Source: Macrostomum lignano
Lineage: Eukaryota
Reading direction: 5' to 3'
Assembly (NCBI GenBank): GCA_002269645.1
Contig: NIVC01000349.1
Coordinates: 186,001-250,000, forward strand
DNA: 64,000 bases
The translations under genes and the position numbers were made by a program. This document shows positions 21,279 through 53,850 of the stretch, in pieces. Numbering within the stretch: position 1 is the first letter of the stretch; each line of letters starts with the position of its first letter. The notes under the pieces were generated by a model. The model saw only the letters and a program-made list of their open reading frames with translations, searched no databases and was not told the DNA's origin.

Positions 21279-34062
<12,784 letters not shown>

Positions 34063-34385: not shown

Positions 34386-35153
34386 CCCAGTGGTTAGAAA
34401 AATTGGGGCGTACCCTCTAGGCCGGCGCCCCGGCGGCCCTCAAGGGTACGCCCCATCCCGCAAGATAAAAGTTTGTAGGTTTTCTTCTTTGTACGTATGA
34501 AATATTTTTGTGAGGAAATTATGTAAAGAGCAGAATTTTTAAAGTTGATTTTTTTAGTTTCGGGTGTTTTTGTGCTCGAACCTGACAGTACGCCTTTCAG
34601 TACGTGCAGTGGACAGTGGGGCGAACTATTGATATCCTTATTAATTATTTTCTTGTATAATGAGCTCATTATTTATTTGCATTGACCAATCCTCATACTA
34701 CAGCTAACTTGAACTTTTAACCCTTTGAGCAGCCATCTCTTTGAAAAATTGCTGCAAGCTCCAAAGTGGGGTATAGGCGACTCGTGCAAATTTTTCTGAG
34801 TTTCATACACTTCAGAAATTGGATGTGAACGCAAAAGTGTGCGTTTTAGCCTACCTACTTATAAGTAATACCTTTTGATCTTCGAAATCAACGCAACAAA
34901 AAATATATTTTTTAATACTCCACTACTTAAGCACTAGCGCATGTACAATGTTGCTTGTATTCTTAAGTTTTCATTTAGATGAGTCCGATTTGGTGGTCAA
35001 TTCAGGATTTTTAAAGTAGTGGGGGCAGATTTGCCCAAATTTTTGTTTTGGTCTAAAAAGCCAAAGTAAGCTCAAAATTTACCCCCCTTATATGCAAGTC
35101 CAGCCATGGCAAAGGGGGCGGCCGCCGGGTCTACTACATCTACGAGTACATTT

Positions 35154-35619
35154 GACCGCCACAATTTGATCGCCGTTCTATTCAAGGTGAAATAGGGCGG
35201 CGGGCAAATTGTCTGGCGGGCAAATTGTCTGGCGGGCAAATTGTCTGGCGGGCAAATTGTCTGGCGGGCAAATTGTCTGGCGGGCAAATTGTCTGGCGGG
35301 CAAATTGTCTGGCGGGCAAATTGTCTGGCGGGCAAATTGTCTGGCGGGCAAATTGTCTGGCGGGCAAATTGTCTGGCGGGCAAATTGTCTGGCGGGCAAA
35401 TTGTCTGGCGGGCAAATTGTCTGGCGGGCAAATTGTCTGGCGGGCAAATTGTCTGGCGGGCAAATTGTCTGGCGGGCAAATTGTCTGGCGGGCAAATTGT
35501 CTGGCGGGCAAATTGTCTGGCGGGCAAATTGTCTGGCGGGCAAATTGTCTGGCGGGCAAATTGTCTGGCGGGCAAATTGTCTGGCGGGCAAATTGTCTGG
35601 CGGGCAAATTGTGGCGGTC
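35154..35619. repeat. 16-bp satellite (GGCGGGCAAATTGTCT)n, about 26 copies, bracketed by a 15-bp inverted repeat (MITE-like cassette)
   Basis: GACCGCCACAATTTG at 35154-35168 and CAAATTGTGGCGGTC at 35605-35619. Confidence 0.88.
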
Positions 35620-36496
35620 TCCGCTGTCGGTCTCCCGCGGCCGCGCCCCCCCCCCTTGGATAGTGGCGTAAATAAATACTCATTTCAAAGTTTTACATGT
35701 AAGTAGGCGGCATACCCTTGCACAAGGTTGCATAATTATTTGAAAGCCGTATGCTTGTATGGGGTGGACAGTTGACAGTCAAAATGCCTATATCTACATG
35801 TACCTCCATACAGTAATAATTTACCTATTAAACAACAGGTAAGGTCAAAGATAACATATGCGTATGCCAGCAAAGGTTTAAAATTTTCAATAATTAATTG
35901 TACGGTACAATGCGATAGCAAAACAAACTAATCTTAGATGCAGCTATTATCTAGAATCTCGATTTATCTTCCAGAATTTTAGAGAAATACAACTAGGACA
36001 GGGGAAATCCCGGAAAATCAATCAGGTTTGCCAAGCTGTATTAAAGGGGGACCAAGCGCATTTTTGCCAAAATACAGAGCCACCCCTCCGCCCCCCTTGG
36101 GTCTTTACCCTTCAGAATCCGCCCCCCCCCCCACATAAGAAATTCTGCTTGCGCCACTGCTAACAGTTCAAGTAATTCTGGAGAGCACAGAGTGCTGTCT
36201 AGAGAAGCTGTTCAGGCTTGGCACAACGCGCCCGCCAAAATTTTGTTAATGTCAACTTTTGCTCATTGTAATGATCGAAATTCCTTGCGAGGGATTGGCT
36301 AACTATTTTACTTTAAGTGCCAGATAGAGAATCTAGCTCAAGACTGCGGGCCAGAAGGAGGAGAGTGGAGGGGAGAGGGGAGAGATGTGAGATGTGAGAG
36401 GAGGGAAGAGAGGAGAGAGGCGAGATGAGAGAAAGAAGGGAGATAAAGGGAGAGAGGAGAGAGGCGAAAGGAGAGATGTCAGAGGAAGGGAGCAAG

Positions 36497-36685
36497 CAGT
36501 AGGGCAACCAGAAATTTTTTGAGGGGGGGGCGGATTCTGGAAGGTAAAGTCCCGTGAGGGAGGGGGCGGAGGGGAGGCTCTGTTTTTGGCGAAAATTCGC
36601 TTGGTCCCCCTTCAATTTTTTCTGGGTCTCCGCCTAAGGGGGGGGCCCGCCCCCCCCCCCCCGCCCCCCCCTGGTTGCGCCACTG
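36497..36685. mobile_element. hAT-type MITE nested in CACTA copy A
   Basis: CAGTAGGGCAACCAG...CTGGTTGCGCCACTG with an 8-bp TSD GGAGCAAG; a diverged inverted relative lies at about 36040-36168. Confidence 0.78.
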
Positions 36686-37785
36686 GGAGCAAGGAAAGAG
36701 GGGAAAGGAGGAGAGAGGGGAGATTTTGATGAGAAAAGGAGAAGAAATTAGCAAAAAAGCTGAGAAGAGATGCAAACCTTGAGCGGGCTGGATTGTTATT
36801 GGCATGGGAAGTTAGAAAGGACCCGAGGGCTGGATAGAGAGACTGCGGGCCGCATGTGGCCCGTGGGCTGGAGTTTGCTGACCCCTGCAGCCTGCAGTAG
36901 GCTATGCATGACGGGCCCAGTTAACTGCATAATGGCAAATAAGAGACATGGGAGATTGGAGATAGGAGACTGTCTCCCCTGTCTCCCCTTCATTTATCTC
37001 CCCGATTACGAGTAGGGCACAGTCACTCAGTCACATTTTGATAAGGAGGGATACATAGACATAGATATTTTCTCAGTTTTCATATTCAGAGGCGGTCAGA
37101 GCTCAAATGGGACAGGTCATGAATAAATAACAATCTAACCCCCGCCTTGTCATTTTTCCGGATGAATAAATCCACTGAATCATAAAGGTTTCAAAGTGCC
37201 TTTGCGTTCTCATGACAGTTTTTGCCACTCAATTATTCTAGTCTTACTGAATCCCCGAGTTAACAGAAAATTATAGCTCGGCGCACGTCCGCCAGCTTGA
37301 ATATTCTCGCTATATTATTGTTCTCTATTTGCGATCGTCTTTTACAACCCGACATCAATAAAACCCGTGTGGGCTTTATCTCTCATTAACAGAAATCTCT
37401 CATCAATTATAGCCTGTATAAAGCTTACTCATTTTGAGTTGCTCTTAGAAAAATGTTTTGAATTTCCTGGCCAGTGGCAATAACCCGTAATGACAGGGCA
37501 ATGCAAGGAATTATTTTAACCTAGAGGTGACAGCTAATTTTGGCCAATTCATTTCAGTTGGGTGGGGGGGGGTTAGAAGAAAGGCTAGAGAAGTGATATG
37601 GGAATTTCTACGTTGTACCGTTCTTGCCTGCTTAAGCGAACCTATGCGAAACAAACAAACTGTCCTGACTCCTTATCAGTGCAGGTCATCAAGTTTTTTC
37701 TATTCCCATATTGCACCAAAGATAAAGGAAGAACAAAGACGAATTTCGTGCGAGGCTTGACAAGGTCTGAACTATATATAGCACA

Positions 37786-38813
37786 TGAAGCACATGAAGG
37801 CTACTGAATTCAGACAGTACTTGCTGTACCTAGGACCTGTCCTCTTCAAAGGCATTTTAAATGAAGAAAGGTATAACCACTTTCTTTACCTCCATTTCGC
37901 CATTTACGCATACTCCAACGAAAGGTACTCCAAGTGGTGGACGCAGGCAAAAACTTGCATTGAAGTTTTTGTTGAACGGGCTGCCCACCTTTACGGCCAG
38001 AAGTTTATAAGTTTCAATCTTCACACTATTCTTCATTTGGATGAGTTTGTCCGAAAGCTAGGCAGTTTAAACAACTTTTCGACTTTCCCTTTCGAAAACT
38101 TTCTTGGATCTGTAAAGCGCCGCGTAAAGGTGACAAGGCACATGGCAGCGCATTCAGTTAAGCAGGTGCTCAGAGTTCGCGATCTTCTGTTGAATGAGCA
38201 GCGAATTCCACCGTTGAAATTCAGCACAAAGCGAGGTGATAATTGTTGCATAATCGACAAAGTATGCGTCCTAATCGAAGCTGTAAGTGAAGCTAATCAA
38301 GTCACTGGCAGGATTTTACACCCAGTTGACAACATCTACGCCAACCCATATCCATCTTTGCGTCTGGGAATCGGCTTGTACAGGATGACATCTGGTGTTC
38401 TAACTGGCACACCTGAGCGAAAGTGCTGGATTTTGCCTGCGAATCTGCTTGCCAATCTTGCTGGAGCGGACAGGGATCCAGCAAGCCATTTTTTTGTCAT
38501 TCCTCTGACAGGTGACTCCGAGGAGGCCTGATGTAGGACGCGTGAGTCGCAAGTGAGTACTAAAAATATCTTTCTCTGGTTTTTTATATCAATCCGATTT
38601 CCTTCTATCTCGATTCTCGTATTCCCTGTATTCTGCAATTCTGCAATTTCTTCCTGTATATGTTCTCAGCTTCAACACGCAGACATGATTGTAGATTGTG
38701 AGTTAAATATTAGTATATTACGATGCATACTCGATCGCAACTGCCATTTTATCTTTACTTTTAGGATCCGCAGTTTCACGAGTTTACTACAAGCCTGGCG
38801 ATCGGTCATTCAT
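37786..38813 (+). pseudogene. Inverted duplicate of the transposase 3' CDS + 3' UTR (left arm of a 1028-bp inverted repeat)
   Basis: Reverse complement of 39323-40350; the ORF-track translations of both arms are identical; lacks the N-terminal catalytic Asp residues. Confidence 0.93.
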
Positions 38814-39604
38814 TCATATATATATATTTTATAAGTTACAACCTAGCATAAACACATAAATACTTTGATACGGAAAGTATTGATTCGATCTGACCTAAAA
38901 TAGGTGCCAGCAAAAGAAAGAAAATATTCATAGCATTTTATATGTGCTTAAAAGTAAAACCAGATGGTAACAGATGGAAATTACAGTTGTGCAGCTAGTT
39001 GATTATTATCAATGGGATAAGTAAAATATTACAAAAATTCTGTTGGCTTGAATTGGAGGTAGGAATACTGTATACAATACCATTAGTATTTCATACTCGT
39101 ATACTGGGGTTTAAGAAAATAAATCCCCCATTTCAGCCACATACAGCGGCATCACCTCCCACTAAGTTTCCGGCCCCTCCACCCCTCCTACACAGTTTTG
39201 AGCTAAATTACCCCTCCGGCCTCTATAACACCGAATTTTAAGCTGTACCTAATTCTAGGGTTCAAGAATGTAAACAATAAAGATAGAATCAATATAATCA
39301 GTCTCTAAAATAACTCCAGTTCATGAATGACCGATCGCCAGGCTTGTAGTAAACTCGTGAAACTGCGGATCCTAAAAGTAAAGATAAAATGGCAGTTGCG
39401 ATCGAGTATGCATCGTAATATACTAATATTTAACTCACAATCTACAATCATGTCTGCGTGTTGAAGCTGAGAACATATACAGGAAGAAATTGCAGAATTG
39501 CAGAATACAGGGAATACGAGAATCGAGATAGAAGGAAATCGGATTGATATAAAAAACCAGAGAAAGATATTTTTAGTACTCACTTGCGACTCACGCGTCC
39601 TACA

Positions 39605-41632
39605 TCAGGCCTCCTCGGAGTCACCTGTCAGAGGAATGACAAAAAAATGGCTTGCTGGATCCCTGTCCGCTCCAGCAAGATTGGCAAGCAGATTCGCAGG
39701 CAAAATCCAGCACTTTCGCTCAGGTGTGCCAGTTAGAACACCAGATGTCATCCTGTACAAGCCGATTCCCAGACGCAAAGATGGATATGGGTTGGCGTAG
39801 ATGTTGTCAACTGGGTGTAAAATCCTGCCAGTGACTTGATTAGCTTCACTTACAGCTTCGATTAGGACGCATACTTTGTCGATTATGCAACAATTATCAC
39901 CTCGCTTTGTGCTGAATTTCAACGGTGGAATTCGCTGCTCATTCAACAGAAGATCGCGAACTCTGAGCACCTGCTTAACTGAATGCGCTGCCATGTGCCT
40001 TGTCACCTTTACGCGGCGCTTTACAGATCCAAGAAAGTTTTCGAAAGGGAAAGTCGAAAAGTTGTTTAAACTGCCTAGCTTTCGGACAAACTCATCCAAA
40101 TGAAGAATAGTGTGAAGATTGAAACTTATAAACTTCTGGCCGTAAAGGTGGGCAGCCCGTTCAACAAAAACTTCAATGCAAGTTTTTGCCTGCGTCCACC
40201 ACTTGGAGTACCTTTCGTTGGAGTATGCGTAAATGGCGAAATGGAGGTAAAGAAAGTGGTTATACCTTTCTTCATTTAAAATGCCTTTGAAGAGGACAGG
40301 TCCTAGGTACAGCAAGTACTGTCTGAATTCAGTAGCCTTCATGTGCTTCAGTTCCAAGTCGATTTTCCGGGGTCTTCGTTGAAAGTTTGAAGGTGTCCAA
40401 CCGGCAGCCATAGTAATTCGGTCGCCCAATAGGCTCATCGGACCGGGATAGACGAGACACTTCTTGCCATTAGATTTGTCGAAAAATAGGTAAAATAGCT
40501 TCCTTGTGACTCCAAGGCATACGGCATGCTGGTAGTCAGGGGGAAAAGCATCGACAAAACTAATGTTAGGCAAATTTAGAAGGGGCGATAGAGCGATTTT
40601 TTTATTTTCCTGGTTAGACTCCTTTCCCTCTCGGTATTGTTGGCTGCTACGAGACTCCCCGACGCTCGTTGAAAATGTTACTCTGTTGTCGGTATAAGGT
40701 CCAGTAGCCCTGCAGTACATGCAACCGACGTACGACATGTGCCCTTGAGTTACTGAGACCCAGGCTCGAGCAGGCGCATCGCAAACAAATCGGATAGTCG
40801 AGAAGCTGATGCTTAAATTTTCGATAATTTTTATTGGACCCGTAAGAAAACGTTTAGCCTCGTCGCAAAATTGTCGAAGATAATCATTCAGAGGTGGCTT
40901 GCCACAACCAGCCCATACGGCTACTGGAAAAGGTCTGCTGAATATGCTGGGAATAGACATAAGTATGGGCCAAAGACCGAAGTGGCTTGCTCGGTACAAA
41001 GGCAAGCCGTCAAAATTAACGATGGCTTCAATTTTGTAAACCTTCTCAGTTTCACTATCGTGTTGTAGATATTCTGGCTTCATGTGCAGCTGGTTTTTGC
41101 GAAACATTAGTTCTAGATTTTTCAGAATCGAAATGTAGCGAAAATGGCCTTTTCCCATGGGCTCCAATTTTTCCGTTGGATCGCCAGCATTGATGACGGC
41201 CTCAATAGAGTTGACAGACTTCGGCGCAGGCAAGCCTATGTCTCTTAGACCATCAACAAGGAATTTTTTAGATCCACGACTTAGGTTGAAACAAGAAAAG
41301 TAGACTACCAGCAAGGCGAATATTTTATCTTCTAAAGAGCGGTCATCCTCTTTCTTGTCAATCTCCTCATCTTCATCGCTGCAAACTCGCGCGAACTCGT
41401 CAAAATCAGGATAGCTGCCATTGTCGTTGTCAAGATCTGGATCCGTACCTTCATTGACTTCTGCTACAGAGGACTCCGAAGCGATGAAACCGGCGACTCT
41501 CCCAGAATCATCTGCTTCAAATACTTTTCTTTTTTTCTCTTGCAGTGCGATGTCTTCCAAAGCTTCTTGTTCTCCTTCCATGAACAAGCCCAGCAAATCC
41601 TTATTTGCTTGTCGCCTCAATTGCCTTGTCAT
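39605..41632 (-). CDS. CMC/EnSpm-type DDE transposase, 675 aa, intact
   Basis: NFDGLPL...LWPIL; VCDAPARA...GH.SY.GCMYC; FPPDYQHAVCLGV.RKL; KATEFRQ.LLY; NLHTILHL; TFPFEN.LG. This is the D, D, CxxC, D-H, HxxxH and E motif order typical of CMC transposases. Confidence 0.92.
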   Translation of the reverse strand: MTRQLRRQANKDLLGLFMEGEQEALEDIALQEKKRKVFEADDSGRVAGFIASESSVAEVNEGTDPDLDNDNGSYPDFDEFARVCSDEDEEIDKKEDDRSLEDKIFALLVVYFSCFNLSRGSKKFLVDGLRDIGLPAPKSVNSIEAVINAGDPTEKLEPMGKGHFRYISILKNLELMFRKNQLHMKPEYLQHDSETEKVYKIEAIVNFDGLPLYRASHFGLWPILMSIPSIFSRPFPVAVWAGCGKPPLNDYLRQFCDEAKRFLTGPIKIIENLSISFSTIRFVCDAPARAWVSVTQGHMSYVGCMYCRATGPYTDNRVTFSTSVGESRSSQQYREGKESNQENKKIALSPLLNLPNISFVDAFPPDYQHAVCLGVTRKLFYLFFDKSNGKKCLVYPGPMSLLGDRITMAAGWTPSNFQRRPRKIDLELKHMKATEFRQYLLYLGPVLFKGILNEERYNHFLYLHFAIYAYSNERYSKWWTQAKTCIEVFVERAAHLYGQKFISFNLHTILHLDEFVRKLGSLNNFSTFPFENFLGSVKRRVKVTRHMAAHSVKQVLRVRDLLLNEQRIPPLKFSTKRGDNCCIIDKVCVLIEAVSEANQVTGRILHPVDNIYANPYPSLRLGIGLYRMTSGVLTGTPERKCWILPANLLANLAGADRDPASHFFVIPLTGDSEEA

Positions 41633-41996
41633 TGTTTTCGTCCGAATCAGACTTTGATGATAGTTGACTGTTGTAATAATAATAAAGTAATTACTACGAT
41701 TGCTTATTTCGTATTAAAGAAAGGATATGAACAAAAGCTGGGAAGAATTGAAAACTATTCCTTTGGGGGTTTGTGCGCGCTGATTGGACAGGTATGGATG
41801 CGGGGACGGTAGGGCCAATGAAATTGGAAAAGCCAGGGCGGCCTTTTTCATTCGAAGAACTATAGAAGACAATTGCTTCTAGAAGCAACCTAAACCACTG
41901 AATCATTAAATAAGCATAAACTATAGTGTGAGCTCCAAACTCTTGCTTTATTTGGTACTCAGTTTTGCACTAGCATAGTCTAGTCTGCATGCTACA
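41633..41996. promoter_or_regulatory. Putative bidirectional promoter between the transposase and ORF2
   Basis: 364 bp between head-to-head ATGs; CCAAT boxes at 41783-41787 (reverse), 41815-41819 and 41823-41827 (reverse); GGGCGG at 41836-41841. Confidence 0.55.
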
Positions 41997-44958
41997 ATGA
42001 AGTTTTTAGTGATCTTTAAAGACGACCGTCAAATTGTTGAGGTCTCGGAAAGCGAAGTGAAGCTTCCTGAAGGCTTTCAAAACCTTAAGGAAGAGGAATG
42101 GTTAGAAAAGAGGGACTCCACTGAGAAGTGGAAGTGTGAAGCCTTGTATGAAGGCTGTTTTTACTCTGCTCTAATTATTCAGGTAAGCAACCGATCCCAA
42201 CGATTGAAATGTTAAAATTCTTGAATCGATCTAATATTTGTACGCTCATATTTTCTCATTAATTTAAAGGTAATACTAAGCAACAACCTAGAGCCTGGGA
42301 GCTTCCGCTTTGTGCGTGAATTGGTGGCCAAAAAGACCCGACTGAACCGAATTCTCGAGTTGGTTCAACCCAGAGTCTTTCAGGAGCGTGACATGAAGAA
42401 AGCACGAAGGCATTACCAGACTAAGGTAAAATTAAGCACAGCCCATATAATTTTTATCGAGAACTTTGTTTTCTCCGTTTTACCTTTTAAACTATTTTTT
42501 AAGAAAAGGGAAGAAATTAAATGTGAAAATAATCTTTAAAACTGACATTAACTTGATAATTTCTCATGCCGTAACCATCCCAAACAGAATCTGTCAGACG
42601 GCTCAGCCACCGATTCCGAGGCAATCTTCGAAGATAAGAGCAGCCGCTGTTTGCAACCTCCAGCTTTGCTGCCTAAACAACATCCGCCTACGATTGCACA
42701 GTTAGCGCCAATGCCTCCTATTAGTGATGATGAAGCAGAAGCTGGCGTAGACGCCGATATGGAAGCTGAGGCGGAAGCTGAGGCGGAAGCTGAAGTGGAA
42801 GCTGAGGCGGAAGCTGAAGTGGAAGCTGAGGCGGAAGCTGAAGCGGAAGATGAGGTGGAAGCTGAGATCGGAGCTGAGGTGGAAGCTGAGATGGGAGCTG
42901 AGGCGGAAGCTGAGGCGGAAGCTGAGGTGGAAGCTGAGATGGGAGCTGAGGTGGAAGCTGAGGCGGAAGCTGAAATAGAAGCTGAGTTCGTAGCAGATGA
43001 TCGATCGACGATTCCTAAGTCGCCTCCCACCATTTCATCTTTTAATTTTGGTTCTGGCTTTCTTAGAAAACTAGAAGAGCAGATCCAAGCCGGTGTTAGC
43101 TTTGAGCTGGAAAGTCCAAGAGGCATCAAGTTTCTGTCCTTATATGCCCTACGCGAACTTACTATGCGCAAGAATGAATTGAAAGCATTAGAAAATAGTT
43201 TGTCCAAACAAATCACCGCAATGCGCACTGAAGTGCAGAGCGTGCTACGCTTTTTGGAACCTGTTGGCGCTGACATTCCAACTGATAATTCTGAGCCTTC
43301 ATTCTGGCCGATCAACTCCTGGGAAAAATATGTGCAATTCGCTTCCAGTCCAAATGAACATATTTCTACTTTGGTAAGTTCATGACAGAGTTTTTTATTT
43401 TCTTTTCATTAGAAGAAATGCTCTAACTACTACTCAAAGCGCACTAGTACTATCACTGAAATAATAATCTATAAGTATTCTCACCTGTAAAAATCTAAAC
43501 AGAAGAGCCTGCTACGTTCATGCAAGCGAGACAAGTGGTCCGATGCTTTAATGGCAATGCTTAACGAGAGCTTGTCGAAAGAGATGCAGGCGGTTATTAA
43601 TTTAATCGGGTCAGACATGCGAAGCCGAGCTGTTGCTGCTGGAGTTGCGACCAACCTTACTGATGCGCAGCTTGGATTTCAGAGCACTCTGCTCAGCCAT
43701 TTCCAAAGTAAGTCTACTTAATCAACGTTCAATGAGACTTTTAGAGCTAAATATCAAGAAATTAGTCGAGCACAGTGCATGCTATTCATAGTAACTTTCA
43801 ACTTTTTTCCTAACAGAAGCAATCACATTCATCTATGGCGCGACCGCTGAAGCCGGCAGGCCCTCTGAACAATCTGTAAGAAATACTTGCAGACAGCAGC
43901 TAAAGCATGGCGGTGACCGATTAAAGGGGCGGTCGCATCGCACAGGAAGCCAGCTGCTTTCCGGAGTCCAGACTCAAAGCCCCGCTTCTGACAGCGCCGT
44001 ACAAAGACAGTCTCTGGTGGCAGCGACTCCAAGCCCCGCTTCTGGCAGCGCCGTACAAAGACAGTCTCTGGTGGCAGCGACTCAAAGTCCCGCTTCTGGC
44101 AGCGCCGTACAAAGACAGTCTCTGGTGGCAGCGACTCCAAGCCCCGCTTCTGGCAGCGCCGTACAAAGACAGTCTCTGGTGGCAGCGACTCCAAGCCCCG
44201 CTTCTGGCAGCGCCGTACAAAGACAGTCTCTGGTGGCAGCGACTCAAAGTCCCGCTTCTGGCAGCGCCGTACAAAGACAGTCTCTGGTGGCAGCGACTCC
44301 AAGCCCCGCTTCTGGCAGCGCCGTACAAAGACAGTCTCTGGTGGCAGCGACTCCAAGCCCCGCTTCTGGCAGCGCCGTGCAAAGACGGTCTTTGGTGGCA
44401 GCGACTCAAAGTCCCGCTTCTGGCAGCGCTGTGCAAAGACGATCTCTGGTGGCAGCGACTCAAAGTCCCGCTTCTGGCAGCGCCGTGCAAAGACGGTCTT
44501 TGGTGGCAGCGACTCAAAGTCCCGCTTCTGGCAGCGCCGTGCAAAGACACAGCCATTCATCTTCTTTTTCCCTAGTGAGTAAAAACGTATCTAAACTGAA
44601 TAATGAACGATGAATACTATGATTGCTAAGCATTAAATACTACTATCAGTAAGATAAAATGTGCATGCAGTAATTTTTTGTTTTCTTTCCAATGTCACAG
44701 ACACCATCGCGACTATCAGCGGGAGAAGTGCCGCCAGCGGCGACAGCAAAGCCGAGCTCCCAATCCAGAAAGCGAGCGAGTATTCAGTTGGATTCTCAGC
44801 CTCGAAAGCGGAACAACCATCGCCCCCGTTCAGCAAAGTCAAAAACCAACTACCGCACTGACTGCTCTCTCGAATCTGATGACGAAACCGAATCAAGTGG
44901 ATCAAACTGGTCCGAAGATCAGCGAGAGCTGGATGATGGACAATTTAAAATCTTCTAA
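41997..44958 (+). CDS. CACTA accessory ORF2 (TnpA-like); exons 41997-42182, 42270-42425, 42588-43373, 43503-43707, 43817-44574, 44701-44958; 782 aa
   Basis: Five GT-AG introns with consistent phases (0,0,0,1,0) and no internal stop. Acidic E/A tract, coiled-coil-like segment, a helical region ending ..[11 protein letters not shown], about eleven 18-aa repeats, and a basic then acidic tail. Function is inferred from position only. Confidence 0.75.
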
Positions 44959-45537
44959 TTATGAGAGCACGTATTTTACGAGTAAATGCTGTCAAAATGA
45001 TTTTAAAACTGACATTCTTTCAACACCTTTGTTGCCAAAAACTTAACTATTTTTCGTTCTAATATTGTGTTTTAATATCAGTTCCATTTAACTTCGCTAA
45101 ATAAATTCAAATTTCATTACATTTAAGTTTCTTATTCGATTTCATTCATAGACTCAAACTAATTTTCTAAAGAACTGCAAAAAAATTTACAAAAGGCAAA
45201 CTTCGTAAGCAGGTAGCAGCAAGGTTGTTTAAATTTATAATGGAAGAGACAATTGCTTAAAAAAATCAGATAGCTCTGAAAATTATTTGGAAATAAATTC
45301 AATTTTGAAACAACCAGAAAGCTAGGCTGCTGCCAGAGCAAAATATATCAGTAAAAGCCCTGCATACTACTGTTAGTAGAGTAAACCAATTCTTGCCTTA
45401 ATTTATTGGGCAGTCCACCGGGCGCCGGGTATAAGGCCGGCGCCCCGACTGGACAAAGAGTGCGCCCCGCTACCGGCCACAGGCCACCGGGCGCCGCGGT
45501 CTGCGCACCCTTGGGCGTACCAGAATTTCCCACTGGG

Positions 45538-45910: not shown

Positions 45911-46988
45911 TCCTCTCTGCCTCTCTAACCTCCCCTCCCTCACTACCCTCTTCTTTAGCTCGCTACCCTCGTCTGTCCCTCTATACCCTCCTTTCTCCCT
46001 CTCTACCCCCCTCTCTCTTTCTCTACCCTATCCTGTCCCTCTCTTGCCCTCCATGTTTTTCACCAAGTAGTTCCTAAACAATTACAGAAGCAGAGATGCA
46101 AAATATTTTGTCTTCCACGCGCTCGAACAATTTGTACTCCTTAAAGCAAAAGCAGCAAACTGCCTAACAATCTTTCCCTTTTTTCTATACATGCACTGCA
46201 CTAATTATAATTCTCATAATCCCAGTGGTTAGAAAAATTGGGGCGTACCCTCTAGGCCGGCGCCCCGGCGGCCCTCAAGGGTACGCCCCATCCCGCAAGA
46301 TAAAAGTTTGTAGGTTTTCTTCTTTGTACGTATGAAATATTTTTGTGAGGAAATTATGTAAAGAGCAGAATTTTTAAAGTTGATTTTTTTAGTTTCGGGT
46401 GTTTTTGTGCTCGAACCTGACAGTACGCCTTTCAGTACGTGCAGTGGACAGTGGGGCGAACTATTGATATCCTTATTAATTATTTTCTTGTATAATGAGC
46501 TCATTATTTATTTGCATTGACCAATCCTCATACTACAGCTAACTTGAACTTTTAACCCTTTGAGCAGCCATCTCTTTGAAAAATTGCTGCAAGCTCCAAA
46601 GTGGGGTATAGGCGACTCGTGCAAATTTTTCTGAGTTTCATACACTTCAGAAATTGGATGTGAACGCAAAAGTGTGCGTTTTAGCCTACCTACTTATAAG
46701 TAATACCTTTTGATCTTCGAAATCAACGCAACAAAAAATATATTTTTTAATACTCCACTACTTAAGCACTAGCGCATGTACAATGTTGCTTGTATTCTTA
46801 AGTTTTCATTTAGATGAGTCCGATTTGGTGGTCAATTCAGGATTTTTAAAGTAGTGGGGGCAGATTTGCCCAAATTTTTGTTTTGGTCTAAAAAGCCAAA
46901 GTAAGCTCAAAATTTACCCCCCTTATATGCAAGTCCAGCCATGGCAAAGGGGGCGGCCGCCGGGTCTACTACATCTACGAGTACATTT

Positions 46989-47470
46989 GACCGCCACAAT
47001 TTGATCGCCGTTCTATTCAAGGTGAAATAGGGCGGCGGGCAAATTGTCTGGCGGGCAAATTGTCTGGCGGGCAAATTGTCTGGCGGGCAAATTGTCTGGC
47101 GGGCAAATTGTCTGGCGGGCAAATTGTCTGGCGGGCAAATTGTCTGGCGGGCAAATTGTCTGGCGGGCAAATTGTCTGGCGGGCAAATTGTCTGGCGGGC
47201 AAATTGTCTGGCGGGCAAATTGTCTGGCGGGCAAATTGTCTGGCGGGCAAATTGTCTGGCGGGCAAATTGTCTGGCGGGCAAATTGTCTGGCGGGCAAAT
47301 TGTCTGGCGGGCAAATTGTCTGGCGGGCAAATTGTCTGGCGGGCAAATTGTCTGGCGGGCAAATTGTCTGGCGGGCAAATTGTCTGGCGGGCAAATTGTC
47401 TGGCGGGCAAATTGTCTGGCGGGCAAATTGTCTGGCGGGCAAATTGTCTGGCGGGCAAATTGTGGCGGTC
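46989..47470. repeat. 16-bp satellite cassette in copy B (one more unit than copy A)
   Basis: Same inverted-repeat brackets; span is 16 bp longer. Confidence 0.88.
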
Positions 47471-48347
47471 TCCGCTGTCGGTCTCCCGCGGCCGCGCCCC
47501 CCCCCTTGGATAGTGGCGTAAATAAATACTCATTTCAAAGTTTTACATGTAAGTAGGCGGCATACCCTTGCACAAGGTTGCATAATTATTTGAAAGCCGT
47601 ATGCTTGTATGGGGTGGACAGTTGACAGTCAAAATGCCTATATCTACATGTACCTCCATACAGTAATAATTTACCTATTAAACAACAGGTAAGGTCAAAG
47701 ATAACATATGCGTATGCCAGCAAAGGTTTAAAATTTTCAATAATTAATTGTACGGTACAATGCGATAGCAAAACAAACTAATCTTAGATGCAGCTATTAT
47801 CTAGAATCTCGATTTATCTTCCAGAATTTTAGAGAAATACAACTAGGACAGGGGAAATCCCGGAAAATCAATCAGGTTTGCCAAGCTGTATTAAAGGGGG
47901 ACCAAGCGCATTTTTGCCAAAATACAGAGCCACCCCTCCGCCCCCCTTGGGTCTTTACCCTTCAGAATCCGCCCCCCCCCCCCACATAAGAAATTCTGCT
48001 TGCGCCACTGCTAACAGTTCAAGTAATTCTGGAGAGCACAGAGTGCTGTCTAGAGAAGCTGTTCAGGCTTGGCACAACGCGCCCGCCAAAATTTTGTTAA
48101 TGTCAACTTTTGCTCATTGTAATGATCGAAATTCCTTGCGAGGGATTGGCTAACTATTTTACTTTAAGTGCCAGATAGAGAATCTAGCTCAAGACTGCGG
48201 GCCAGAAGGAGGAGAGTGGAGGGGAGAGGGGAGAGATGTGAGATGTGAGAGGAGGGAAGAGAGGAGAGAGGCGAGATGAGAGAAAGAAGGGAGATAAAGG
48301 GAGAGAGGAGAGAGGCGAAAGGAGAGATGTCAGAGGAAGGGAGCAAG

Positions 48348-48537
48348 CAGTAGGGCAACCAGAAATTTTTTGAGGGGGGGGGCGGATTCTGGAAGGTAAA
48401 GTCCCGTGAGGGAGGGGGCGGAGGGGAGGCTCTGTTTTTGGCGAAAATTCGCTTGGTCCCCCTTCAATTTTTTCTGGGTCTCCGCCTAAGGGGGGGCCCC
48501 GCCCCCCCCCCCCCCGCCCCCCCTGGTTGCGCCACTG
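48348..48537. mobile_element. hAT-type MITE nested in CACTA copy B
   Basis: Same TIRs and GGAGCAAG TSD as 36497-36685. Confidence 0.78.
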
Positions 48538-49639
48538 GGAGCAAGGAAAGAGGGGAAAGGAGGAGAGAGGGGAGATTTTGATGAGAAAAGGAGAAGAAAT
48601 TAGCAAAAAAGCTGAGAAGAGATGCAAACCTTGAGCGGGCTGGATTGTTATTGGCATGGGAAGTTAGAAAGGACCCGAGGGCTGGATAGAGAGACTGCGG
48701 GCCGCATGTGGCCCGTGGGCTGGAGTTTGCTGACCCCTGCAGCCTGCAGTAGGCTATGCATGACGGGCCCAGTTAACTGCATAATGGCAAATAAGAGACA
48801 TGGGAGATTGGAGATAGGAGACTGTCTCCCCTGTCTCCCCTTCATTTATCTCCCCGATTACGAGTAGGGCACAGTCACTCAGTCACATTTTGATAAGGAG
48901 GGATACATAGACATAGATATTTTCTCAGTTTTCATATTCAGAGGCGGTCAGAGCTCAAATGGGACAGGTCATGAATAAATAACAATCTAACCCCGCCTTG
49001 TCATTTTTCCGGATGAATAAATCCACTGAATCATAAAGGTTTCAAAGTGCCTTTGCGTTCTCATGACAGTTTTTGCCACTCAATTATTCTAGTCTTACTG
49101 AATCCCCGAGTTAACAGAAAATTATAGCTCGGCGCACGTCCGCCAGCTTGAATATTCTCGCTATATTATTGTTCTCTATTTGCGATCGTCTTTTACAACC
49201 CGACATCAATAAAACCCGTGTGGGCTTTATCTCTCATTAACAGAAATCTCTCATCAATTATAGCCTGTATAAAGCTTACTCATTTTGAGTTGCTCTTAGA
49301 AAAATGTTTTGAATTTCCTGGCCAGTGGCAATAACCCGTAATGACAGGGCAATGCAAGGAATTATTTTAACCTAGAGGTGACAGCTAATTTTGGCCAATT
49401 CATTTCAGTTGGGTGGGGGGGGGGGGTTAGAAGAAAGGCTAGAGAAGTGATATGGGAATTTCTACGTTGTACCGTTCTTGCCTGCTTAAGCGAACCTATG
49501 CGAAACAAACAAACTGTCCTGACTCCTTATCAGTGCAGGTCATCAAGTTTTTTCTATTCCCATATTGCACCAAAGATAAAGGAAGAACAAAGACGAATTT
49601 CGTGCGAGGCTTGACAAGGTCTGAACTATATATAGCACA

Positions 49640-50667
49640 TGAAGCACATGAAGGCTACTGAATTCAGACAGTACTTGCTGTACCTAGGACCTGTCCTCTT
49701 CAAAGGCATTTTAAATGAAGAAAGGTATAACCACTTTCTTTACCTCCATTTCGCCATTTACGCATACTCCAACGAAAGGTACTCCAAGTGGTGGACGCAG
49801 GCAAAAACTTGCATTGAAGTTTTTGTTGAACGGGCTGCCCACCTTTACGGCCAGAAGTTTATAAGTTTCAATCTTCACACTATTCTTCATTTGGATGAGT
49901 TTGTCCGAAAGCTAGGCAGTTTAAACAACTTTTCGACTTTCCCTTTCGAAAACTTTCTTGGATCTGTAAAGCGCCGCGTAAAGGTGACAAGGCACATGGC
50001 AGCGCATTCAGTTAAGCAGGTGCTCAGAGTTCGCGATCTTCTGTTGAATGAGCAGCGAATTCCACCGTTGAAATTCAGCACAAAGCGAGGTGATAATTGT
50101 TGCATAATCGACAAAGTATGCGTCCTAATCGAAGCTGTAAGTGAAGCTAATCAAGTCACTGGCAGGATTTTACACCCAGTTGACAACATCTACGCCAACC
50201 CATATCCATCTTTGCGTCTGGGAATCGGCTTGTACAGGATGACATCTGGTGTTCTAACTGGCACACCTGAGCGAAAGTGCTGGATTTTGCCTGCGAATCT
50301 GCTTGCCAATCTTGCTGGAGCGGACAGGGATCCAGCAAGCCATTTTTTTGTCATTCCTCTGACAGGTGACTCCGAGGAGGCCTGATGTAGGACGCGTGAG
50401 TCGCAAGTGAGTACTAAAAATATCTTTCTCTGGTTTTTTATATCAATCCGATTTCCTTCTATCTCGATTCTCGTATTCCCTGTATTCTGCAATTCTGCAA
50501 TTTCTTCCTGTATATGTTCTCAGCTTCAACACGCAGACATGATTGTAGATTGTGAGTTAAATATTAGTATATTACGATGCATACTCGATCGCAACTGCCA
50601 TTTTATCTTTACTTTTAGGATCCGCAGTTTCACGAGTTTACTACAAGCCTGGCGATCGGTCATTCAT
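49640..50667 (+). pseudogene. Inverted duplicate of the transposase 3' end (left arm, copy B)
   Basis: Reverse complement of 51177-52204. Confidence 0.93.
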
Positions 50668-51458
50668 TCATATATATATATTTTATAAGTTACAACCTAG
50701 CATAAACACATAAATACTTTGATACGGAAAGTATTGATTCGATCTGACCTAAAATAGGTGCCAGCAAAAGAAAGAAAATATTCATAGCATTTTATATGTG
50801 CTTAAAAGTAAAACCAGATGGTAACAGATGGAAATTACAGTTGTGCAGCTAGTTGATTATTATCAATGGGATAAGTAAAATATTACAAAAATTCTGTTGG
50901 CTTGAATTGGAGGTAGGAATACTGTATACAATACCATTAGTATTTCATACTCGTATACTGGGGTTTAAGAAAATAAATCCCCCATTTCAGCCACATACAG
51001 CGGCATCACCTCCCACTAAGTTTCCGGCCCCTCCACCCCTCCTACACAGTTTTGAGCTAAATTACCCCTCCGGCCTCTATAACACCGAATTTTAAGCTGT
51101 ACCTAATTCTAGGGTTCAAGAATGTAAACAATAAAGATAGAATCAATATAATCAGTCTCTAAAATAACTCCAGTTCATGAATGACCGATCGCCAGGCTTG
51201 TAGTAAACTCGTGAAACTGCGGATCCTAAAAGTAAAGATAAAATGGCAGTTGCGATCGAGTATGCATCGTAATATACTAATATTTAACTCACAATCTACA
51301 ATCATGTCTGCGTGTTGAAGCTGAGAACATATACAGGAAGAAATTGCAGAATTGCAGAATACAGGGAATACGAGAATCGAGATAGAAGGAAATCGGATTG
51401 ATATAAAAAACCAGAGAAAGATATTTTTAGTACTCACTTGCGACTCACGCGTCCTACA

Positions 51459-53486
51459 TCAGGCCTCCTCGGAGTCACCTGTCAGAGGAATGACAAAAAA
51501 ATGGCTTGCTGGATCCCTGTCCGCTCCAGCAAGATTGGCAAGCAGATTCGCAGGCAAAATCCAGCACTTTCGCTCAGGTGTGCCAGTTAGAACACCAGAT
51601 GTCATCCTGTACAAGCCGATTCCCAGACGCAAAGATGGATATGGGTTGGCGTAGATGTTGTCAACTGGGTGTAAAATCCTGCCAGTGACTTGATTAGCTT
51701 CACTTACAGCTTCGATTAGGACGCATACTTTGTCGATTATGCAACAATTATCACCTCGCTTTGTGCTGAATTTCAACGGTGGAATTCGCTGCTCATTCAA
51801 CAGAAGATCGCGAACTCTGAGCACCTGCTTAACTGAATGCGCTGCCATGTGCCTTGTCACCTTTACGCGGCGCTTTACAGATCCAAGAAAGTTTTCGAAA
51901 GGGAAAGTCGAAAAGTTGTTTAAACTGCCTAGCTTTCGGACAAACTCATCCAAATGAAGAATAGTGTGAAGATTGAAACTTATAAACTTCTGGCCGTAAA
52001 GGTGGGCAGCCCGTTCAACAAAAACTTCAATGCAAGTTTTTGCCTGCGTCCACCACTTGGAGTACCTTTCGTTGGAGTATGCGTAAATGGCGAAATGGAG
52101 GTAAAGAAAGTGGTTATACCTTTCTTCATTTAAAATGCCTTTGAAGAGGACAGGTCCTAGGTACAGCAAGTACTGTCTGAATTCAGTAGCCTTCATGTGC
52201 TTCAGTTCCAAGTCGATTTTCCGGGGTCTTCGTTGAAAGTTTGAAGGTGTCCAACCGGCAGCCATAGTAATTCGGTCGCCCAATAGGCTCATCGGACCGG
52301 GATAGACGAGACACTTCTTGCCATTAGATTTGTCGAAAAATAGGTAAAATAGCTTCCTTGTGACTCCAAGGCATACGGCATGCTGGTAGTCAGGGGGAAA
52401 AGCATCGACAAAACTAATGTTAGGCAAATTTAGAAGGGGCGATAGAGCGATTTTTTTATTTTCCTGGTTAGACTCCTTTCCCTCTCGGTATTGTTGGCTG
52501 CTACGAGACTCCCCGACGCTCGTTGAAAATGTTACTCTGTTGTCGGTATAAGGTCCAGTAGCCCTGCAGTACATGCAACCGACGTACGACATGTGCCCTT
52601 GAGTTACTGAGACCCAGGCTCGAGCAGGCGCATCGCAAACAAATCGGATAGTCGAGAAGCTGATGCTTAAATTTTCGATAATTTTTATTGGACCCGTAAG
52701 AAAACGTTTAGCCTCGTCGCAAAATTGTCGAAGATAATCATTCAGAGGTGGCTTGCCACAACCAGCCCATACGGCTACTGGAAAAGGTCTGCTGAATATG
52801 CTGGGAATAGACATAAGTATGGGCCAAAGACCGAAGTGGCTTGCTCGGTACAAAGGCAAGCCGTCAAAATTAACGATGGCTTCAATTTTGTAAACCTTCT
52901 CAGTTTCACTATCGTGTTGTAGATATTCTGGCTTCATGTGCAGCTGGTTTTTGCGAAACATTAGTTCTAGATTTTTCAGAATCGAAATGTAGCGAAAATG
53001 GCCTTTTCCCATGGGCTCCAATTTTTCCGTTGGATCGCCAGCATTGATGACGGCCTCAATAGAGTTGACAGACTTCGGCGCAGGCAAGCCTATGTCTCTT
53101 AGACCATCAACAAGGAATTTTTTAGATCCACGACTTAGGTTGAAACAAGAAAAGTAGACTACCAGCAAGGCGAATATTTTATCTTCTAAAGAGCGGTCAT
53201 CCTCTTTCTTGTCAATCTCCTCATCTTCATCGCTGCAAACTCGCGCGAACTCGTCAAAATCAGGATAGCTGCCATTGTCGTTGTCAAGATCTGGATCCGT
53301 ACCTTCATTGACTTCTGCTACAGAGGACTCCGAAGCGATGAAACCGGCGACTCTCCCAGAATCATCTGCTTCAAATACTTTTCTTTTTTTCTCTTGCAGT
53401 GCGATGTCTTCCAAAGCTTCTTGTTCTCCTTCCATGAACAAGCCCAGCAAATCCTTATTTGCTTGTCGCCTCAATTGCCTTGTCAT
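51459..53486 (-). CDS. CMC/EnSpm-type DDE transposase, copy B, 675 aa
   Basis: Translation identical to 39605-41632 in the ORF track. Confidence 0.92.
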   Translation of the reverse strand: MTRQLRRQANKDLLGLFMEGEQEALEDIALQEKKRKVFEADDSGRVAGFIASESSVAEVNEGTDPDLDNDNGSYPDFDEFARVCSDEDEEIDKKEDDRSLEDKIFALLVVYFSCFNLSRGSKKFLVDGLRDIGLPAPKSVNSIEAVINAGDPTEKLEPMGKGHFRYISILKNLELMFRKNQLHMKPEYLQHDSETEKVYKIEAIVNFDGLPLYRASHFGLWPILMSIPSIFSRPFPVAVWAGCGKPPLNDYLRQFCDEAKRFLTGPIKIIENLSISFSTIRFVCDAPARAWVSVTQGHMSYVGCMYCRATGPYTDNRVTFSTSVGESRSSQQYREGKESNQENKKIALSPLLNLPNISFVDAFPPDYQHAVCLGVTRKLFYLFFDKSNGKKCLVYPGPMSLLGDRITMAAGWTPSNFQRRPRKIDLELKHMKATEFRQYLLYLGPVLFKGILNEERYNHFLYLHFAIYAYSNERYSKWWTQAKTCIEVFVERAAHLYGQKFISFNLHTILHLDEFVRKLGSLNNFSTFPFENFLGSVKRRVKVTRHMAAHSVKQVLRVRDLLLNEQRIPPLKFSTKRGDNCCIIDKVCVLIEAVSEANQVTGRILHPVDNIYANPYPSLRLGIGLYRMTSGVLTGTPERKCWILPANLLANLAGADRDPASHFFVIPLTGDSEEA

Positions 53487-53850
53487 TGTTTTCGTCCGAA
53501 TCAGACTTTGATGATAGTTGACTGTTGTAATAATAATAAAGTAATTACTACGATTGCTTATTTCGTATTAAAGAAAGGATATGAACAAAAGCTGGGAAGA
53601 ATTGAAAACTATTCCTTTGGGGGTTTGTGCGCGCTGATTGGACAGGTATGGATGCGGGGACGGTAGGGCCAATGAAATTGGAAAAGCCAGGGCGGCCTTT
53701 TTCATTCGAAGAACTATAGAAGACAATTGCTTCTAGAAGCAACCTAAACCACTGAATCATTAAATAAGCATAAACTATAGTGTGAGCTCCAAACTCTTGC
53801 TTTATTTGGTACTCAGTTTTGCACTAGCATAGTCTAGTCTGCATGCTACA

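What the first reader, a model, noticed from the sequence alone, without database searches (positions are those of the whole stretch)
37786..41632. Intact CACTA transposon carrying its own 1-kb anti-transposase hairpin (Mu-killer-like self-silencing cassette)
Seen: the last 746 bp of the intact transposase CDS plus about 280 bp of 3' UTR (39323-40350) are duplicated in inverted orientation at 37786-38813, 509 bp away. The arms look identical, and the same structure is present in copy B (49640-50667 / 51177-52204), so it was inherited through transposition. By eye I found no AATAAA/ATTAAA on the transposase (-) strand in the UTR or spacer. The left junction shows a slippage-like GCACATGAA-GCACATGAA duplication. 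Established: the inverted-duplication locus Mu killer silences maize MuDR in trans through hairpin-derived small RNA. Inference: read-through transposase transcripts fold into ~1 kb of dsRNA, so the element could produce siRNA against its own family while still being mobile. That would be an autonomous element with built-in negative feedback, rather than a defective killer allele.
Basis: partly seen in the sequence, partly recalled or inferred. Interest (0 to 1): 0.85.

Follow-up and report, generated by a model that had tools for sequence, protein, structure and literature searches.

The report
Mobile flatworm transposon with built-in hairpin
An apparently intact 11-kb DNA transposon in a Macrostomum flatworm genome carries a perfect 1-kb backwards copy of the end of its own transposase gene and has still been copied to a second site, which makes it a natural test case for how an active transposon might first trigger its own RNA silencing, although no RNA evidence exists yet.

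Summary
Arms 37786-38813 and 39323-40350 are 1,028 nt, 100% complementary and 509 bp apart, and the same structure is in copy B. The right arm is the last 746 bp of a 675-aa ORF plus 282 bp downstream. The ORF keeps all family-invariant residues.

New findings:
- The carrier is an 11,152-bp element (34386-45537, again at 46221-57391) with 8-bp termini CCCAGTGG/CCACTGGG. The two copies have different flanks, so they are separate insertions.
- The same termini occur around Macrostomum lignano relatives and fit the published CCC-core animal branch of the CACTA superfamily, not the plant CACTA motif.
- A second, divergent spliced gene (ORF2) is 98% identical to M. lignano proteins.
- None of 7 relatives' loci has the inverted arm, and all arms are identical, so the duplication is very recent and lineage-specific. 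It was probably a microhomology template switch into a TA-rich tract.
- The transposase strand has no AATAAA/ATTAAA for 4.7 kb (P about 0.004), so read-through into a perfect hairpin is plausible.

Hairpin RNA, small RNAs and silencing are untested. Adaptive self-regulation is unsupported. I read it as an incipient, still-mobile killer-type copy.

The parts
34386..45537 (.). Element copy A, 11,152 bp, inserted into a 20-bp minisatellite
   Evidence: 99.76% identical to 46221-57391. Identity stops exactly at the 8-bp inverted termini. The flanks 34215-34385 and 45538-46029 are the two halves of one minisatellite.
46221..57391 (.). Element copy B, same orientation, 684 bp to the right of A, in unique sequence, flanked by AAT|...|AAT
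   Evidence: It differs from A by 4 substitutions, one 16-bp repeat unit and homopolymer lengths.
34386..34393 (+). Left terminal inverted repeat CCCAGTGG (in copy B: 46221-46228)
   Evidence: The same 8-mer starts the M. lignano relative in L001 and the L004 terminus. Published animal CACTA-superfamily TIRs start with CCC (PMC1636069).
45530..45537 (+). Right terminal inverted repeat CCACTGGG (in copy B: 57384-57391)
   Evidence: Logan contig L003 ends exactly on this 8-mer.
39605..41632 (-). Transposase ORF, 675 aa, single exon (in copy B: 51459-53486)
   Evidence: Its length is typical of the family and it keeps all 39 invariant columns of a 25-sequence alignment. Relatives hit DUF4218 and Transposase_21.
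39323..40350 (-). Right arm (the original): last 746 bp of the CDS plus 282 bp of 3' flank (in copy B: 51177-52204)
38814..39322 (.). 509-bp spacer / loop, 65% A+T, unique in the window (in copy B: 50668-51176)
37786..38813 (+). Left arm: the inverted duplicate, antisense in a (-) strand transcript. The junction creates an in-frame ATG at 37785, giving a 248-aa (+) ORF (in copy B: 49640-50667)
37781..37798 (+). Outer junction: tandem GCACATGAA-GCACATGAA. The arm lies between ...CTATATATAGCACA and TCATATATATATATTTT, with 4-5 nt of microhomology at both junctions
   Evidence: read directly from the sequence.
41997..44955 (+). ORF2, a spliced gene divergent from the transposase. Exon 1 is 41997-42182, a GT..AG intron is 42183-42269, and exon 2 starts at 42270. 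It runs through the 12-bp and 54-bp minisatellites (in copy B: 53851-56809)
   Evidence: 98% identical to M. lignano UniProt proteins. The splice sites were read. There are 16 clusters in M. lignano.
34911..34916 (-). First canonical poly(A) hexamer (ATTAAA) on the transposase strand, 4,689 nt past the stop codon and about 0.5 kb from the left terminus

Best explanation
This is a real and very young internal rearrangement of an otherwise complete, recently mobile DNA transposon of a Macrostomum flatworm.

The element is 11.15 kb long. It has CCCAGTGG termini, a CACTA-superfamily-type transposase on the (-) strand, and a divergent second gene on the (+) strand.

A single template-switch or microhomology-mediated repair event (inferred) copied 1,028 bp, comprising the transposase 3' end and 282 bp of downstream sequence. 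The copy went in inverted orientation into a TA-rich tract 509 bp downstream of the original. The rearranged element was then mobilised at least once, giving two near-identical copies 684 bp apart (most parsimonious reading).

The transposase strand lacks any canonical poly(A) signal for 4.7 kb. Transposase transcripts therefore probably extend through the inverted arm and fold into a perfect 1-kb dsRNA stem (inferred). In a host that has both dsRNA-triggered RNAi and transposon-directed piRNAs, such a stem should yield small RNAs against the 3' third of the transposase mRNA. These would act on this copy and on all related copies (inferred, untested).

I therefore read it as an incipient 'killer' copy that is still structurally autonomous. 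It is an accident that may start silencing of its own family, not an evolved self-regulation device.
For: - Structure and coordinates.
- Element boundaries, differing flanks and the AAT duplication.
- A and B differ by 4 substitutions, none within 37786-41632.
- Termini are conserved in M. lignano and Logan relatives and match the published CCC-core animal TRC elements.
- Intact ORF. Superfamily link through relatives.
- The hairpin is absent from 7 relatives' loci.
- Junction microhomologies and the TA-rich target.
- The poly(A)-free stretch is 4,688 nt with 5.6 signals expected (P=0.0035), against 8 on the other strand.
- All 7 relatives, and ORF2 of this same element, have canonical signals near their stop codons.
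- The host has piRNA-based transposon silencing and responds to long dsRNA: PMC4604429.
- Inverted duplications of transposase sequence give dsRNA, siRNA and silencing in maize: PMC3440606 and 10.1101/2020.01.07.897926.
Against: - There are no RNA or small-RNA data. Transcription, 3' ends, hairpin formation and silencing are all inferred.
- Variant poly(A) hexamers are present in the UTR and spacer, so transcripts could end before the arm.
- The fact that the arm-bearing element was copied suggests the hairpin did not block mobility immediately.
- Gene conversion between two adjacent 11-kb repeats could have spread the arm without transposition.
- No other genomic copy of the family could be retrieved.
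- Raw reads were not available to exclude a mis-assembly.
Confidence: 0.6

Rival explanations
1. The structure is real but inert. Transposase transcripts end at a non-canonical signal before 38813, or the element is already transcriptionally silent. No hairpin RNA is made, and the inverted arm is a neutral or slightly deleterious scar.
For: - Many variant hexamers lie on the (-) strand in the UTR and spacer (ACTAAA at 39572; TATAAA at 38937 and 38828; AATATA at 38823).
- The element was copied after acquiring the arm.
- The transposase is absent from M. lignano protein sets although ORF2 is annotated many times. This could mean it is not expressed.
Against: - The canonical signal is significantly depleted for 4.7 kb on that strand only.
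- Relatives and ORF2 use canonical signals close to their stop codons.
Confidence: 0.27
2. One reading: an evolved self-limiting device. The hairpin is a selected, heritable negative-feedback module that lets the element family keep its copy number low while staying mobile.
For: - The arm sits inside an element with an intact ORF and both termini, and it is present in both copies.
- There is no canonical terminator before the arm.
Against: - All four arms are identical and the two copies differ by only 0.04%, so there has been no time for selection to act or to be detected.
- None of 7 relatives' loci has the arm. The compact 3.7-kb M. lignano relative lacks any such feature.
- The junctions look like a repair accident.
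- From population-genetic theory (my own knowledge), selection for self-restraint in transposons of outcrossing hosts is weak.
Confidence: 0.06
3. Assembly artefact. The inverted arm comes from chimeric foldback or amplification-derived reads and was propagated to both near-identical copies during consensus building.
For: - Perfect arm identity is what an artefact would give.
- The two copies are nearly identical, so reads could be shared between them.
- Small animals are sometimes sequenced after whole-genome amplification, which creates inverted chimeras with microhomology (my own knowledge).
Against: - The same 2.5-kb structure occurs in two copies that have different flanks and their own private differences.
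- A 509-bp asymmetric spacer is not what adapter-skipping foldback reads produce (my own knowledge).
- The arm is embedded in otherwise collinear sequence.
Confidence: 0.06
4. The left arm acts as a gene rather than as antisense. The junction-created ATG at 37785 opens a 248-aa (+) strand ORF, the C-terminal third of the transposase. AATAAA signals follow at 39118 and 39276. The product could be a truncated, dominant-negative transposase fragment.
For: - ORF 37785-38531(+).
- Two canonical poly(A) signals on the (+) strand in the spacer.
Against: - No promoter evidence upstream.
- The ORF is open only because it is an exact copy made very recently.
- Two AATAAA in 509 bp of 65% A+T sequence is close to expectation.
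Confidence: 0.03
5. Two element copies inserted tail-to-tail, one later truncated, rather than an internal duplication.
For: Inverted arrangement of homologous transposase 3' ends.
Against: - The inner arm ends (...GGTCATTCAT) are not element termini. The real terminus CCACTGGG/CCCAGTGG lies about 5 kb further on.
- The arm sits between microhomologies in a TA-rich tract.
- The arms are 100% identical.
Confidence: 0.02

Closest known systems
Mu killer (Muk) of maize, silencer of MuDR (PMC3440606)
   Same: Both have a partial inverted duplication of a transposase gene, and both are predicted to give a long hairpin RNA by read-through transcription. In Muk that hairpin yields siRNAs against the transposase transcript.
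   Different: - Muk is a rearranged, non-autonomous derivative. It contains the 5' part of mudrA with two TIRA copies, is driven by a flanking gene's promoter, and acts in trans through plant RdDM.
- Here the duplicated piece is the 3' end. It lies inside an element with an intact ORF and both termini, the presumed driver is the element's own promoter, the element was copied after the rearrangement, and the host is an animal.
- Function here is untested.
Ac/Ds composite insertions made by alternative transposition (Wang et al., bioRxiv 10.1101/2020.01.07.897926)
   Same: Both are spontaneous inverted duplications of an active DNA transposon's own sequence. In maize these are transcribed from the Ac or a flanking promoter into dsRNA and siRNAs and start de novo silencing. 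That paper proposes this as a general initiating mechanism.
   Different: - Those duplications involve the transposon termini and fractured Ac pieces at a host locus, and they are not themselves mobile.
- Here neither junction is at a terminus. The microhomology junctions suggest template switching or gap repair, and the whole unit remains a bounded element.
SmTRC1 and other animal 'TRC' elements of the CACTA superfamily (DeMarco et al. 2006, PMC1636069)
   Same: - A Transposase_21-type transposase clade in flatworms and insects.
- TIRs that begin with CCC (Aedes: CCCAGTCAAC; here: CCCAGTGG).
- Short flanking duplications that are often imperfect.
- Large elements with tandem repeats.
   Different: - No internal inverted duplication of the transposase is described for them.
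- The window element has a separate, divergent ORF2 rather than one alternatively spliced unit.
- The window protein itself is too divergent to hit Pfam Transposase_21 directly.
Animal hairpin-RNA / endo-siRNA loci derived from inverted repeats of transposons or genes (Drosophila hpRNAs, mouse oocyte endo-siRNAs; my own knowledge, not checked here)
   Same: Long, near-perfect inverted repeats transcribed as one RNA and diced into siRNAs that repress homologous transcripts.
   Different: Those are fixed host loci, usually immobile and often old. This one lies within a mobile, apparently autonomous element, and it has no expression evidence.

Membership tests
CACTA / En-Spm superfamily (animal TRC clade) | DDE transposase of the Transposase_21 (tnp2) / DUF4218 type | tested here: met
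   The evidence is indirect. The window ORF gives no Pfam hit even at E<=10. Its homologues (E 1e-45 to 1e-128) do: 12 of 25 aligned members hit DUF4218 and 3 of 25 hit Transposase_21. The window ORF keeps every invariant residue of that alignment.
CACTA / En-Spm superfamily (animal TRC clade) | Terminal inverted repeats with the CACTA core (plants), or the CCC core reported for animal members | tested here: inconclusive
   The plant CACTA core is not met: the termini are CCCAGTGG...CCACTGGG. The animal CCC core is met and matches the first 6 nt of the Aedes TIR CCCAGTCAAC (PMC1636069). The same termini occur around M. lignano and Logan relatives. The perfect TIR is only 8 bp.
CACTA / En-Spm superfamily (animal TRC clade) | Target-site duplication of 3 bp (plants) or 2 bp (animal TRC) | tested here: inconclusive
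   Copy B has AAT/AAT (3 bp, perfect). Copy A has TC/TC (2 bp), which restores the minisatellite exactly, while a 3-bp reading fails. L001 has ACT/ACG. DeMarco et al. saw a 2-bp repeat in only half of the copies.
CACTA / En-Spm superfamily (animal TRC clade) | Subterminal repeats / one long transcription unit spanning most of the element | tested here: inconclusive
   GGGCGTACC occurs once near each end, and minisatellites are abundant. The 4.7-kb poly(A)-free stretch on the transposase strand, ending 0.5 kb from the left terminus, fits a long unit. However, ORF2 is a separate divergent gene. No transcript data are available.
Mu killer-type hairpin silencer | Inverted duplication of part of the transposase gene of an active family | tested here: met
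   The arms are 1,028 nt and 100% identical, and 746 nt of each arm are CDS.
Mu killer-type hairpin silencer | The locus is a defective, immobile derivative containing the 5' / TIR-promoter part of the gene, transcribed from a flanking host promoter | tested here: not met
   There is an intact 675-aa ORF and both termini. The duplicated part is the 3' end. Two copies with different flanks show mobility. The description of Muk was taken from PMC3440606.
Mu killer-type hairpin silencer | The hairpin RNA is made, is processed to small RNAs, and heritably silences the family in trans | not testable with these tools
   Only the fold of a hypothetical read-through RNA and the poly(A)-signal statistics bear on this. 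No RNA data are available.

The most novel reading that the evidence does not exclude
A structurally autonomous animal DNA transposon propagates while carrying a transcribed hairpin against its own transposase. The 'killer' allele that starts small-RNA silencing of a family would then itself be mobile and spread through the genome. This would be either a self-limiting transposon lineage or a Trojan horse that shuts down its relatives.
Probability: 0.15. Interest if true: 0.8.

Novelty: new variant of a known kind. Interest (0 to 1): 0.5.

Why it matters
How an active transposon is first recognised for silencing is still an open question. In animals the usual answer is a chance insertion into a piRNA cluster. 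In maize, rare inverted rearrangements of the transposon itself (Mu killer, Ac composite insertions) do it through hairpin RNA.

This element would be an animal counterpart caught at a very early stage. It has an intact ORF and intact termini, it has just been copied, and it already carries a perfect 1-kb hairpin.

Macrostomum lignano is a laboratory model with RNAi, transgenesis and published small-RNA libraries. The prediction of small RNAs from both strands confined to the arms, together with reduced transposase mRNA, could therefore be checked quickly.

If nothing is made from the arms, this is just one more rearranged transposon copy.

Tried and rejected
1. Tandem segmental duplication. 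My first reading of the 11.85-kb spacing was that A and B are a tandem duplication mediated by the 20-bp minisatellite. I rejected this because identity ends exactly at inverted 8-bp termini, copy B's flanks are unique, and copy A simply splits the minisatellite.
2. Tail-to-tail insertion of two elements. Rejected because the inner arm ends are not termini.
3. Direct Pfam assignment of the transposase. No hit even at E<=10, so I had to go through homologues.
4. Looking for the hairpin in relatives. Seven loci from M. lignano, Hydra, Logan, JGI and ENA assemblies have no inverted repeat overlapping the transposase gene.
5. Looking for an ORF2 homologue of L003 downstream of the transposase. None was found. 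Weak (+) strand hints were resolved only by the exhaustive protein search.
6. Retrieving other genomic copies of this family. The exact-protein look-ups for the transposase, P0242 and P0250 all returned nothing, and all ORF2 homologues are UniRef-only with no contigs.
7. DNA comparison of the window with three M. lignano loci to settle the species. No shared repeats were found, so this was uninformative.
8. Spacer and left flank compared with the rest of the window. Both are unique.
9. Rfam and tRNA scans of the window. Nothing found.
Full report
**1. Checking the observation**

The inverted repeat is exactly as described. The arms are 37786-38813 and 39323-40350. They are 1,028 nt long, 100% complementary and 509 nt apart. 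The identical structure is at 49640-50667 / 51177-52204.

The right arm consists of two parts. The first is the last 746 bp, including the stop codon, of a 675-aa ORF on the (-) strand (39605-41632). The second is the next 282 bp downstream.

The tandem GCACATGAA-GCACATGAA at the outer-left junction lies at 37781-37798. There is no AATAAA or ATTAAA on the (-) strand in the UTR, spacer or left arm.

A (-) strand RNA from 40350 to 37786 folds with all 1,028 arm positions paired to their mirror partner. The MFE is -2162 kcal/mol, against -671 for a shuffled sequence.

**2. What carries the repeat**

Self-comparison shows one 11.17-kb block, 34386-45537, repeated at 46221-57391 with 99.76% identity. 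The two blocks are only 684 bp apart and a 20-bp minisatellite lies at the junction. I therefore first suspected a tandem segmental duplication. The boundaries refute that.

- Both blocks begin with CCCAGTGG and end with CCACTGGG, an 8-bp perfect terminal inverted repeat. Identity stops exactly there.
- Copy A splits the minisatellite into 34215-34385 and 45538-46029. A 2-bp TC duplication restores the array.
- Copy B lies in unique sequence and is flanked by AAT|...|AAT.

So these are two insertions of one 11,152-bp element, in the same orientation and at nearby sites.

The copies differ by 4 substitutions (36645, 36663, 36664, 43203), one 16-bp repeat unit and a few homopolymer lengths. There are no differences anywhere in 37786-41632.

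**3. Which family it belongs to**

The 675-aa ORF has no direct Pfam hit. It does have 141 homologues in animals. The best are from Macrostomum lignano at 39% identity over 93% of the query and 52% over 55%. Others come from Hydra, ticks, insects and fish.

In a 25-sequence alignment the window protein has the usual length and carries all 39 invariant residues, including D208, D285-A-P-A, H298, C304, C307, E435 and E531. Twelve of the 25 members hit DUF4218 and three hit Transposase_21 (tnp2), the CACTA/En-Spm transposase family.

The termini are not CACTA. However, the same CCCAGTGG...CCACTGGG pair brackets the M. lignano homologue in L001. That element spans 8808-12527, is 3,720 bp long, and has its gene at 10001-11911. 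A Logan contig (L003) ends exactly on CCACTGGG. The 5'-side terminus of the closest relative, L004 (CCCAGTGGGGATTTTCTGTGCGCCCC), resembles the window's 5'-side terminus (CCCAGTGGGAAATTCTGGTACGCCC) well beyond the 8-mer.

This fits DeMarco et al. 2006 (PMC1636069). They described animal CACTA-superfamily 'TRC' elements whose TIRs start with CCC (Aedes: CCCAGTCAAC), with 2-bp flanking repeats in about half of the copies.

The element is therefore a member of the animal branch of the CACTA superfamily by its transposase and by its terminus type. It is not a canonical 'CACTA' element.

**4. A second gene, and the host**

To the right of the transposase, on the (+) strand, lies a spliced gene, ORF2.

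- Its ATG is at 41997, and exon 1 runs to 42182.
- A GT..AG intron spans 42183-42269, and exon 2 starts at 42270.
- The gene continues through the 12-bp and 54-bp minisatellites to 44955.
- AATAAA signals follow at 45100 and 45292.

An exhaustive protein search found three proteins 98% identical to its non-repetitive part. These are M. lignano UniProt entries. Sixteen clusters of such proteins exist in M. lignano.

The neighbouring cadherin ORF (30130-34113, (-) strand) also has M. lignano as its best hit by far, although at only 42% identity. The host is therefore M. lignano or a close relative, and the element family is multi-copy there.

One puzzle remains. The transposase of this family is absent from the protein databases, while ORF2 is annotated dozens of times.

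**5. How the inverted arm arose**

The inner arm ends (...GGTCATTCAT) are not element termini. This excludes a tail-to-tail double insertion.

The arm lies between ...CTATATATAGCACA and TCATATATATATATTTT, which is a TA-rich tract. GCACA repeats arm positions 5-9, and TCAT repeats the last four arm bases. The spacer and the left flank are unique in the window.

These are the marks of a templated insertion with microhomology. Likely routes are template switching during repair of a break, or gap repair after excision. This step is inferred.

All four arms are identical. Given the A-B divergence of 0.036%, about 0.4 differences per arm pair would be expected even if the arm arose at the time the two copies split. 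The duplication is therefore recent and cannot be shown to be older than the A/B split by much.

None of the seven relatives' loci (L001-L007) has an inverted repeat overlapping the transposase gene. The compact 3.7-kb M. lignano relative shows what a plain element of this clade looks like. The hairpin is lineage-specific and not a family trait.

**6. Was the arm-bearing element mobile?**

The most parsimonious order is arm formation first, then mobilisation. Both copies carry the identical arm, have proper termini, and have different flanks.

Two alternatives cannot be excluded. The transposase could have been supplied in trans. Or the arm could have been transferred between the two adjacent copies by gene conversion.

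**7. Would a hairpin RNA be made?**

This is the key inference, and only indirect evidence is available.

On the transposase strand, the first canonical poly(A) hexamer after the stop codon is 4,689 nt away, at 34911. That is 0.5 kb from the left terminus. First-order Markov simulations of that stretch give a mean of 5.6 signals and P(0)=0.0035. The opposite strand has 8 in the same stretch.

By contrast, all seven relatives have a canonical signal 6-1,243 nt after their stop codons, four of them within 125 nt. ORF2 of the same element has one 145 nt after its stop.

This strand-specific depletion suggests a long (-) strand transcription unit that runs through the inverted arm. PMC1636069 describes most of the maize Spm element as a single, alternatively spliced transcription unit, and it reports multiple alternatively spliced transcripts for SmTRC1.

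Against this, several variant hexamers are present in the UTR and spacer, and no transcript data exist.

The host has the machinery that would act on such an RNA. It has transposon-directed piRNAs with a ping-pong signature, and it shows efficient knock-down by soaking in long dsRNA (PMC4604429).

**8. Comparison with known systems**

The structure works like Mu killer (PMC3440606). It also resembles the Ac composite insertions produced by alternative transposition, where inverted duplications of transposon sequence are transcribed into dsRNA and siRNAs and start heritable silencing (bioRxiv 10.1101/2020.01.07.897926).

It is not a member of that kind in the strict sense. Those are defective, immobile loci that include terminal or 5' regions and are often driven by host promoters. 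Here the 3' end is duplicated inside an element that keeps an intact ORF, both termini and evident recent mobility, and the host is an animal.

I found no description of an autonomous DNA transposon carrying an inverted copy of its own coding sequence, but my literature search was limited.

**9. Verdict**

The structure, the intactness of the ORF, inheritance through mobilisation, and the lack of a terminator all hold or are strengthened.
- 'Plant-type CACTA' is corrected to the animal CCC-terminus branch in a flatworm.
- 'Built-in negative feedback' is not supported as an evolved function. The arm is a very recent, lineage-specific accident.
- Whether the arm is transcribed and triggers silencing is open, but it could be tested quickly in this model organism.
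- Novelty: a new variant of a known kind. Interest: moderate, 0.5.

Noticed in passing
window 41997-44955 (+); copy B 53851-56809: The element has a second, spliced gene (ORF2) oriented divergently from the transposase, with 364 bp between the two ATGs. It is 98% identical to M. lignano UniProt proteins that carry misleading automatic names. Part of it is encoded by the 12-bp (EAEA...) and 54-bp (18-aa repeat) minisatellites. Its function is unknown. Relatives L003 and L007 have a faintly DUF4806-like gene downstream of the transposase instead.
   Followed up: partly
protein database versus window 39605-41632: The transposase of this family has no hit above 52% identity among 5.8 billion proteins, although ORF2 of the same family is annotated in at least 16 clusters in M. 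lignano. Either most genomic copies lack the transposase, or it is never called or expressed.
   Followed up: no
window 34911-39604, (-) strand: There is a 4,688-nt stretch with no AATAAA or ATTAAA on the transposase strand (5.6 expected, P=0.0035), against 8 on the opposite strand. This suggests a long (-) strand transcription unit reaching almost to the left terminus, possibly with undetected downstream exons.
   Followed up: partly
window 36040-36129 / 36523-36616 (copy B about 47890-48470): A nested pair of roughly 90-nt imperfect inverted repeats (78-91% complementary) lies about 400-500 bp apart inside the element. It looks like a small MITE-like insertion or a foldback.
   Followed up: no
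window 30154-30997: A perfect (TGTC)x211 microsatellite (844 bp, 100% matches) lies in frame with the 3' end of the cadherin-like ORF, where it reads as a DRQT repeat. The real gene probably ends or splices before it.
   Followed up: no
window 34113-34386: Element copy A sits only 273 bp upstream (on the 5' side) of the cadherin ORF 30130-34113(-). Transcripts on the (-) strand that leave the element would run into that gene.
   Followed up: no
window 35199-35612 and 47034-47463: A perfect 16-bp minisatellite (GGCGGGCAAATTGTCT, 26-27 units, 100% matches) lies inside the element. The unit number differs by one between copies A and B, so it has been changing very recently.
   Followed up: partly
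window 1-648 versus 28777-29496: A dispersed repeat of about 0.5-0.65 kb at 94-97% identity, next to a C-type lectin ORF (28159-29940). Not characterised.
   Followed up: no
window 24046-25110 (+): An ORF with a weak reverse-transcriptase (RVT_1) match, probably a retroelement fragment. It is flanked by related minisatellites at 23368-23985 and 26238-26737.
   Followed up: no
whole window: The minisatellite density is unusually high, with arrays of 12- to 54-bp units at about 1.4, 4, 6.4, 7.1, 8.2-9.5, 12.5-13.5, 14.2, 15.5-16.5, 21.9, 23.4, 57.8, 59.2, 60.7-63.1 and 63.8 kb. No Rfam family or tRNA was found in the 64 kb.
   Followed up: partly
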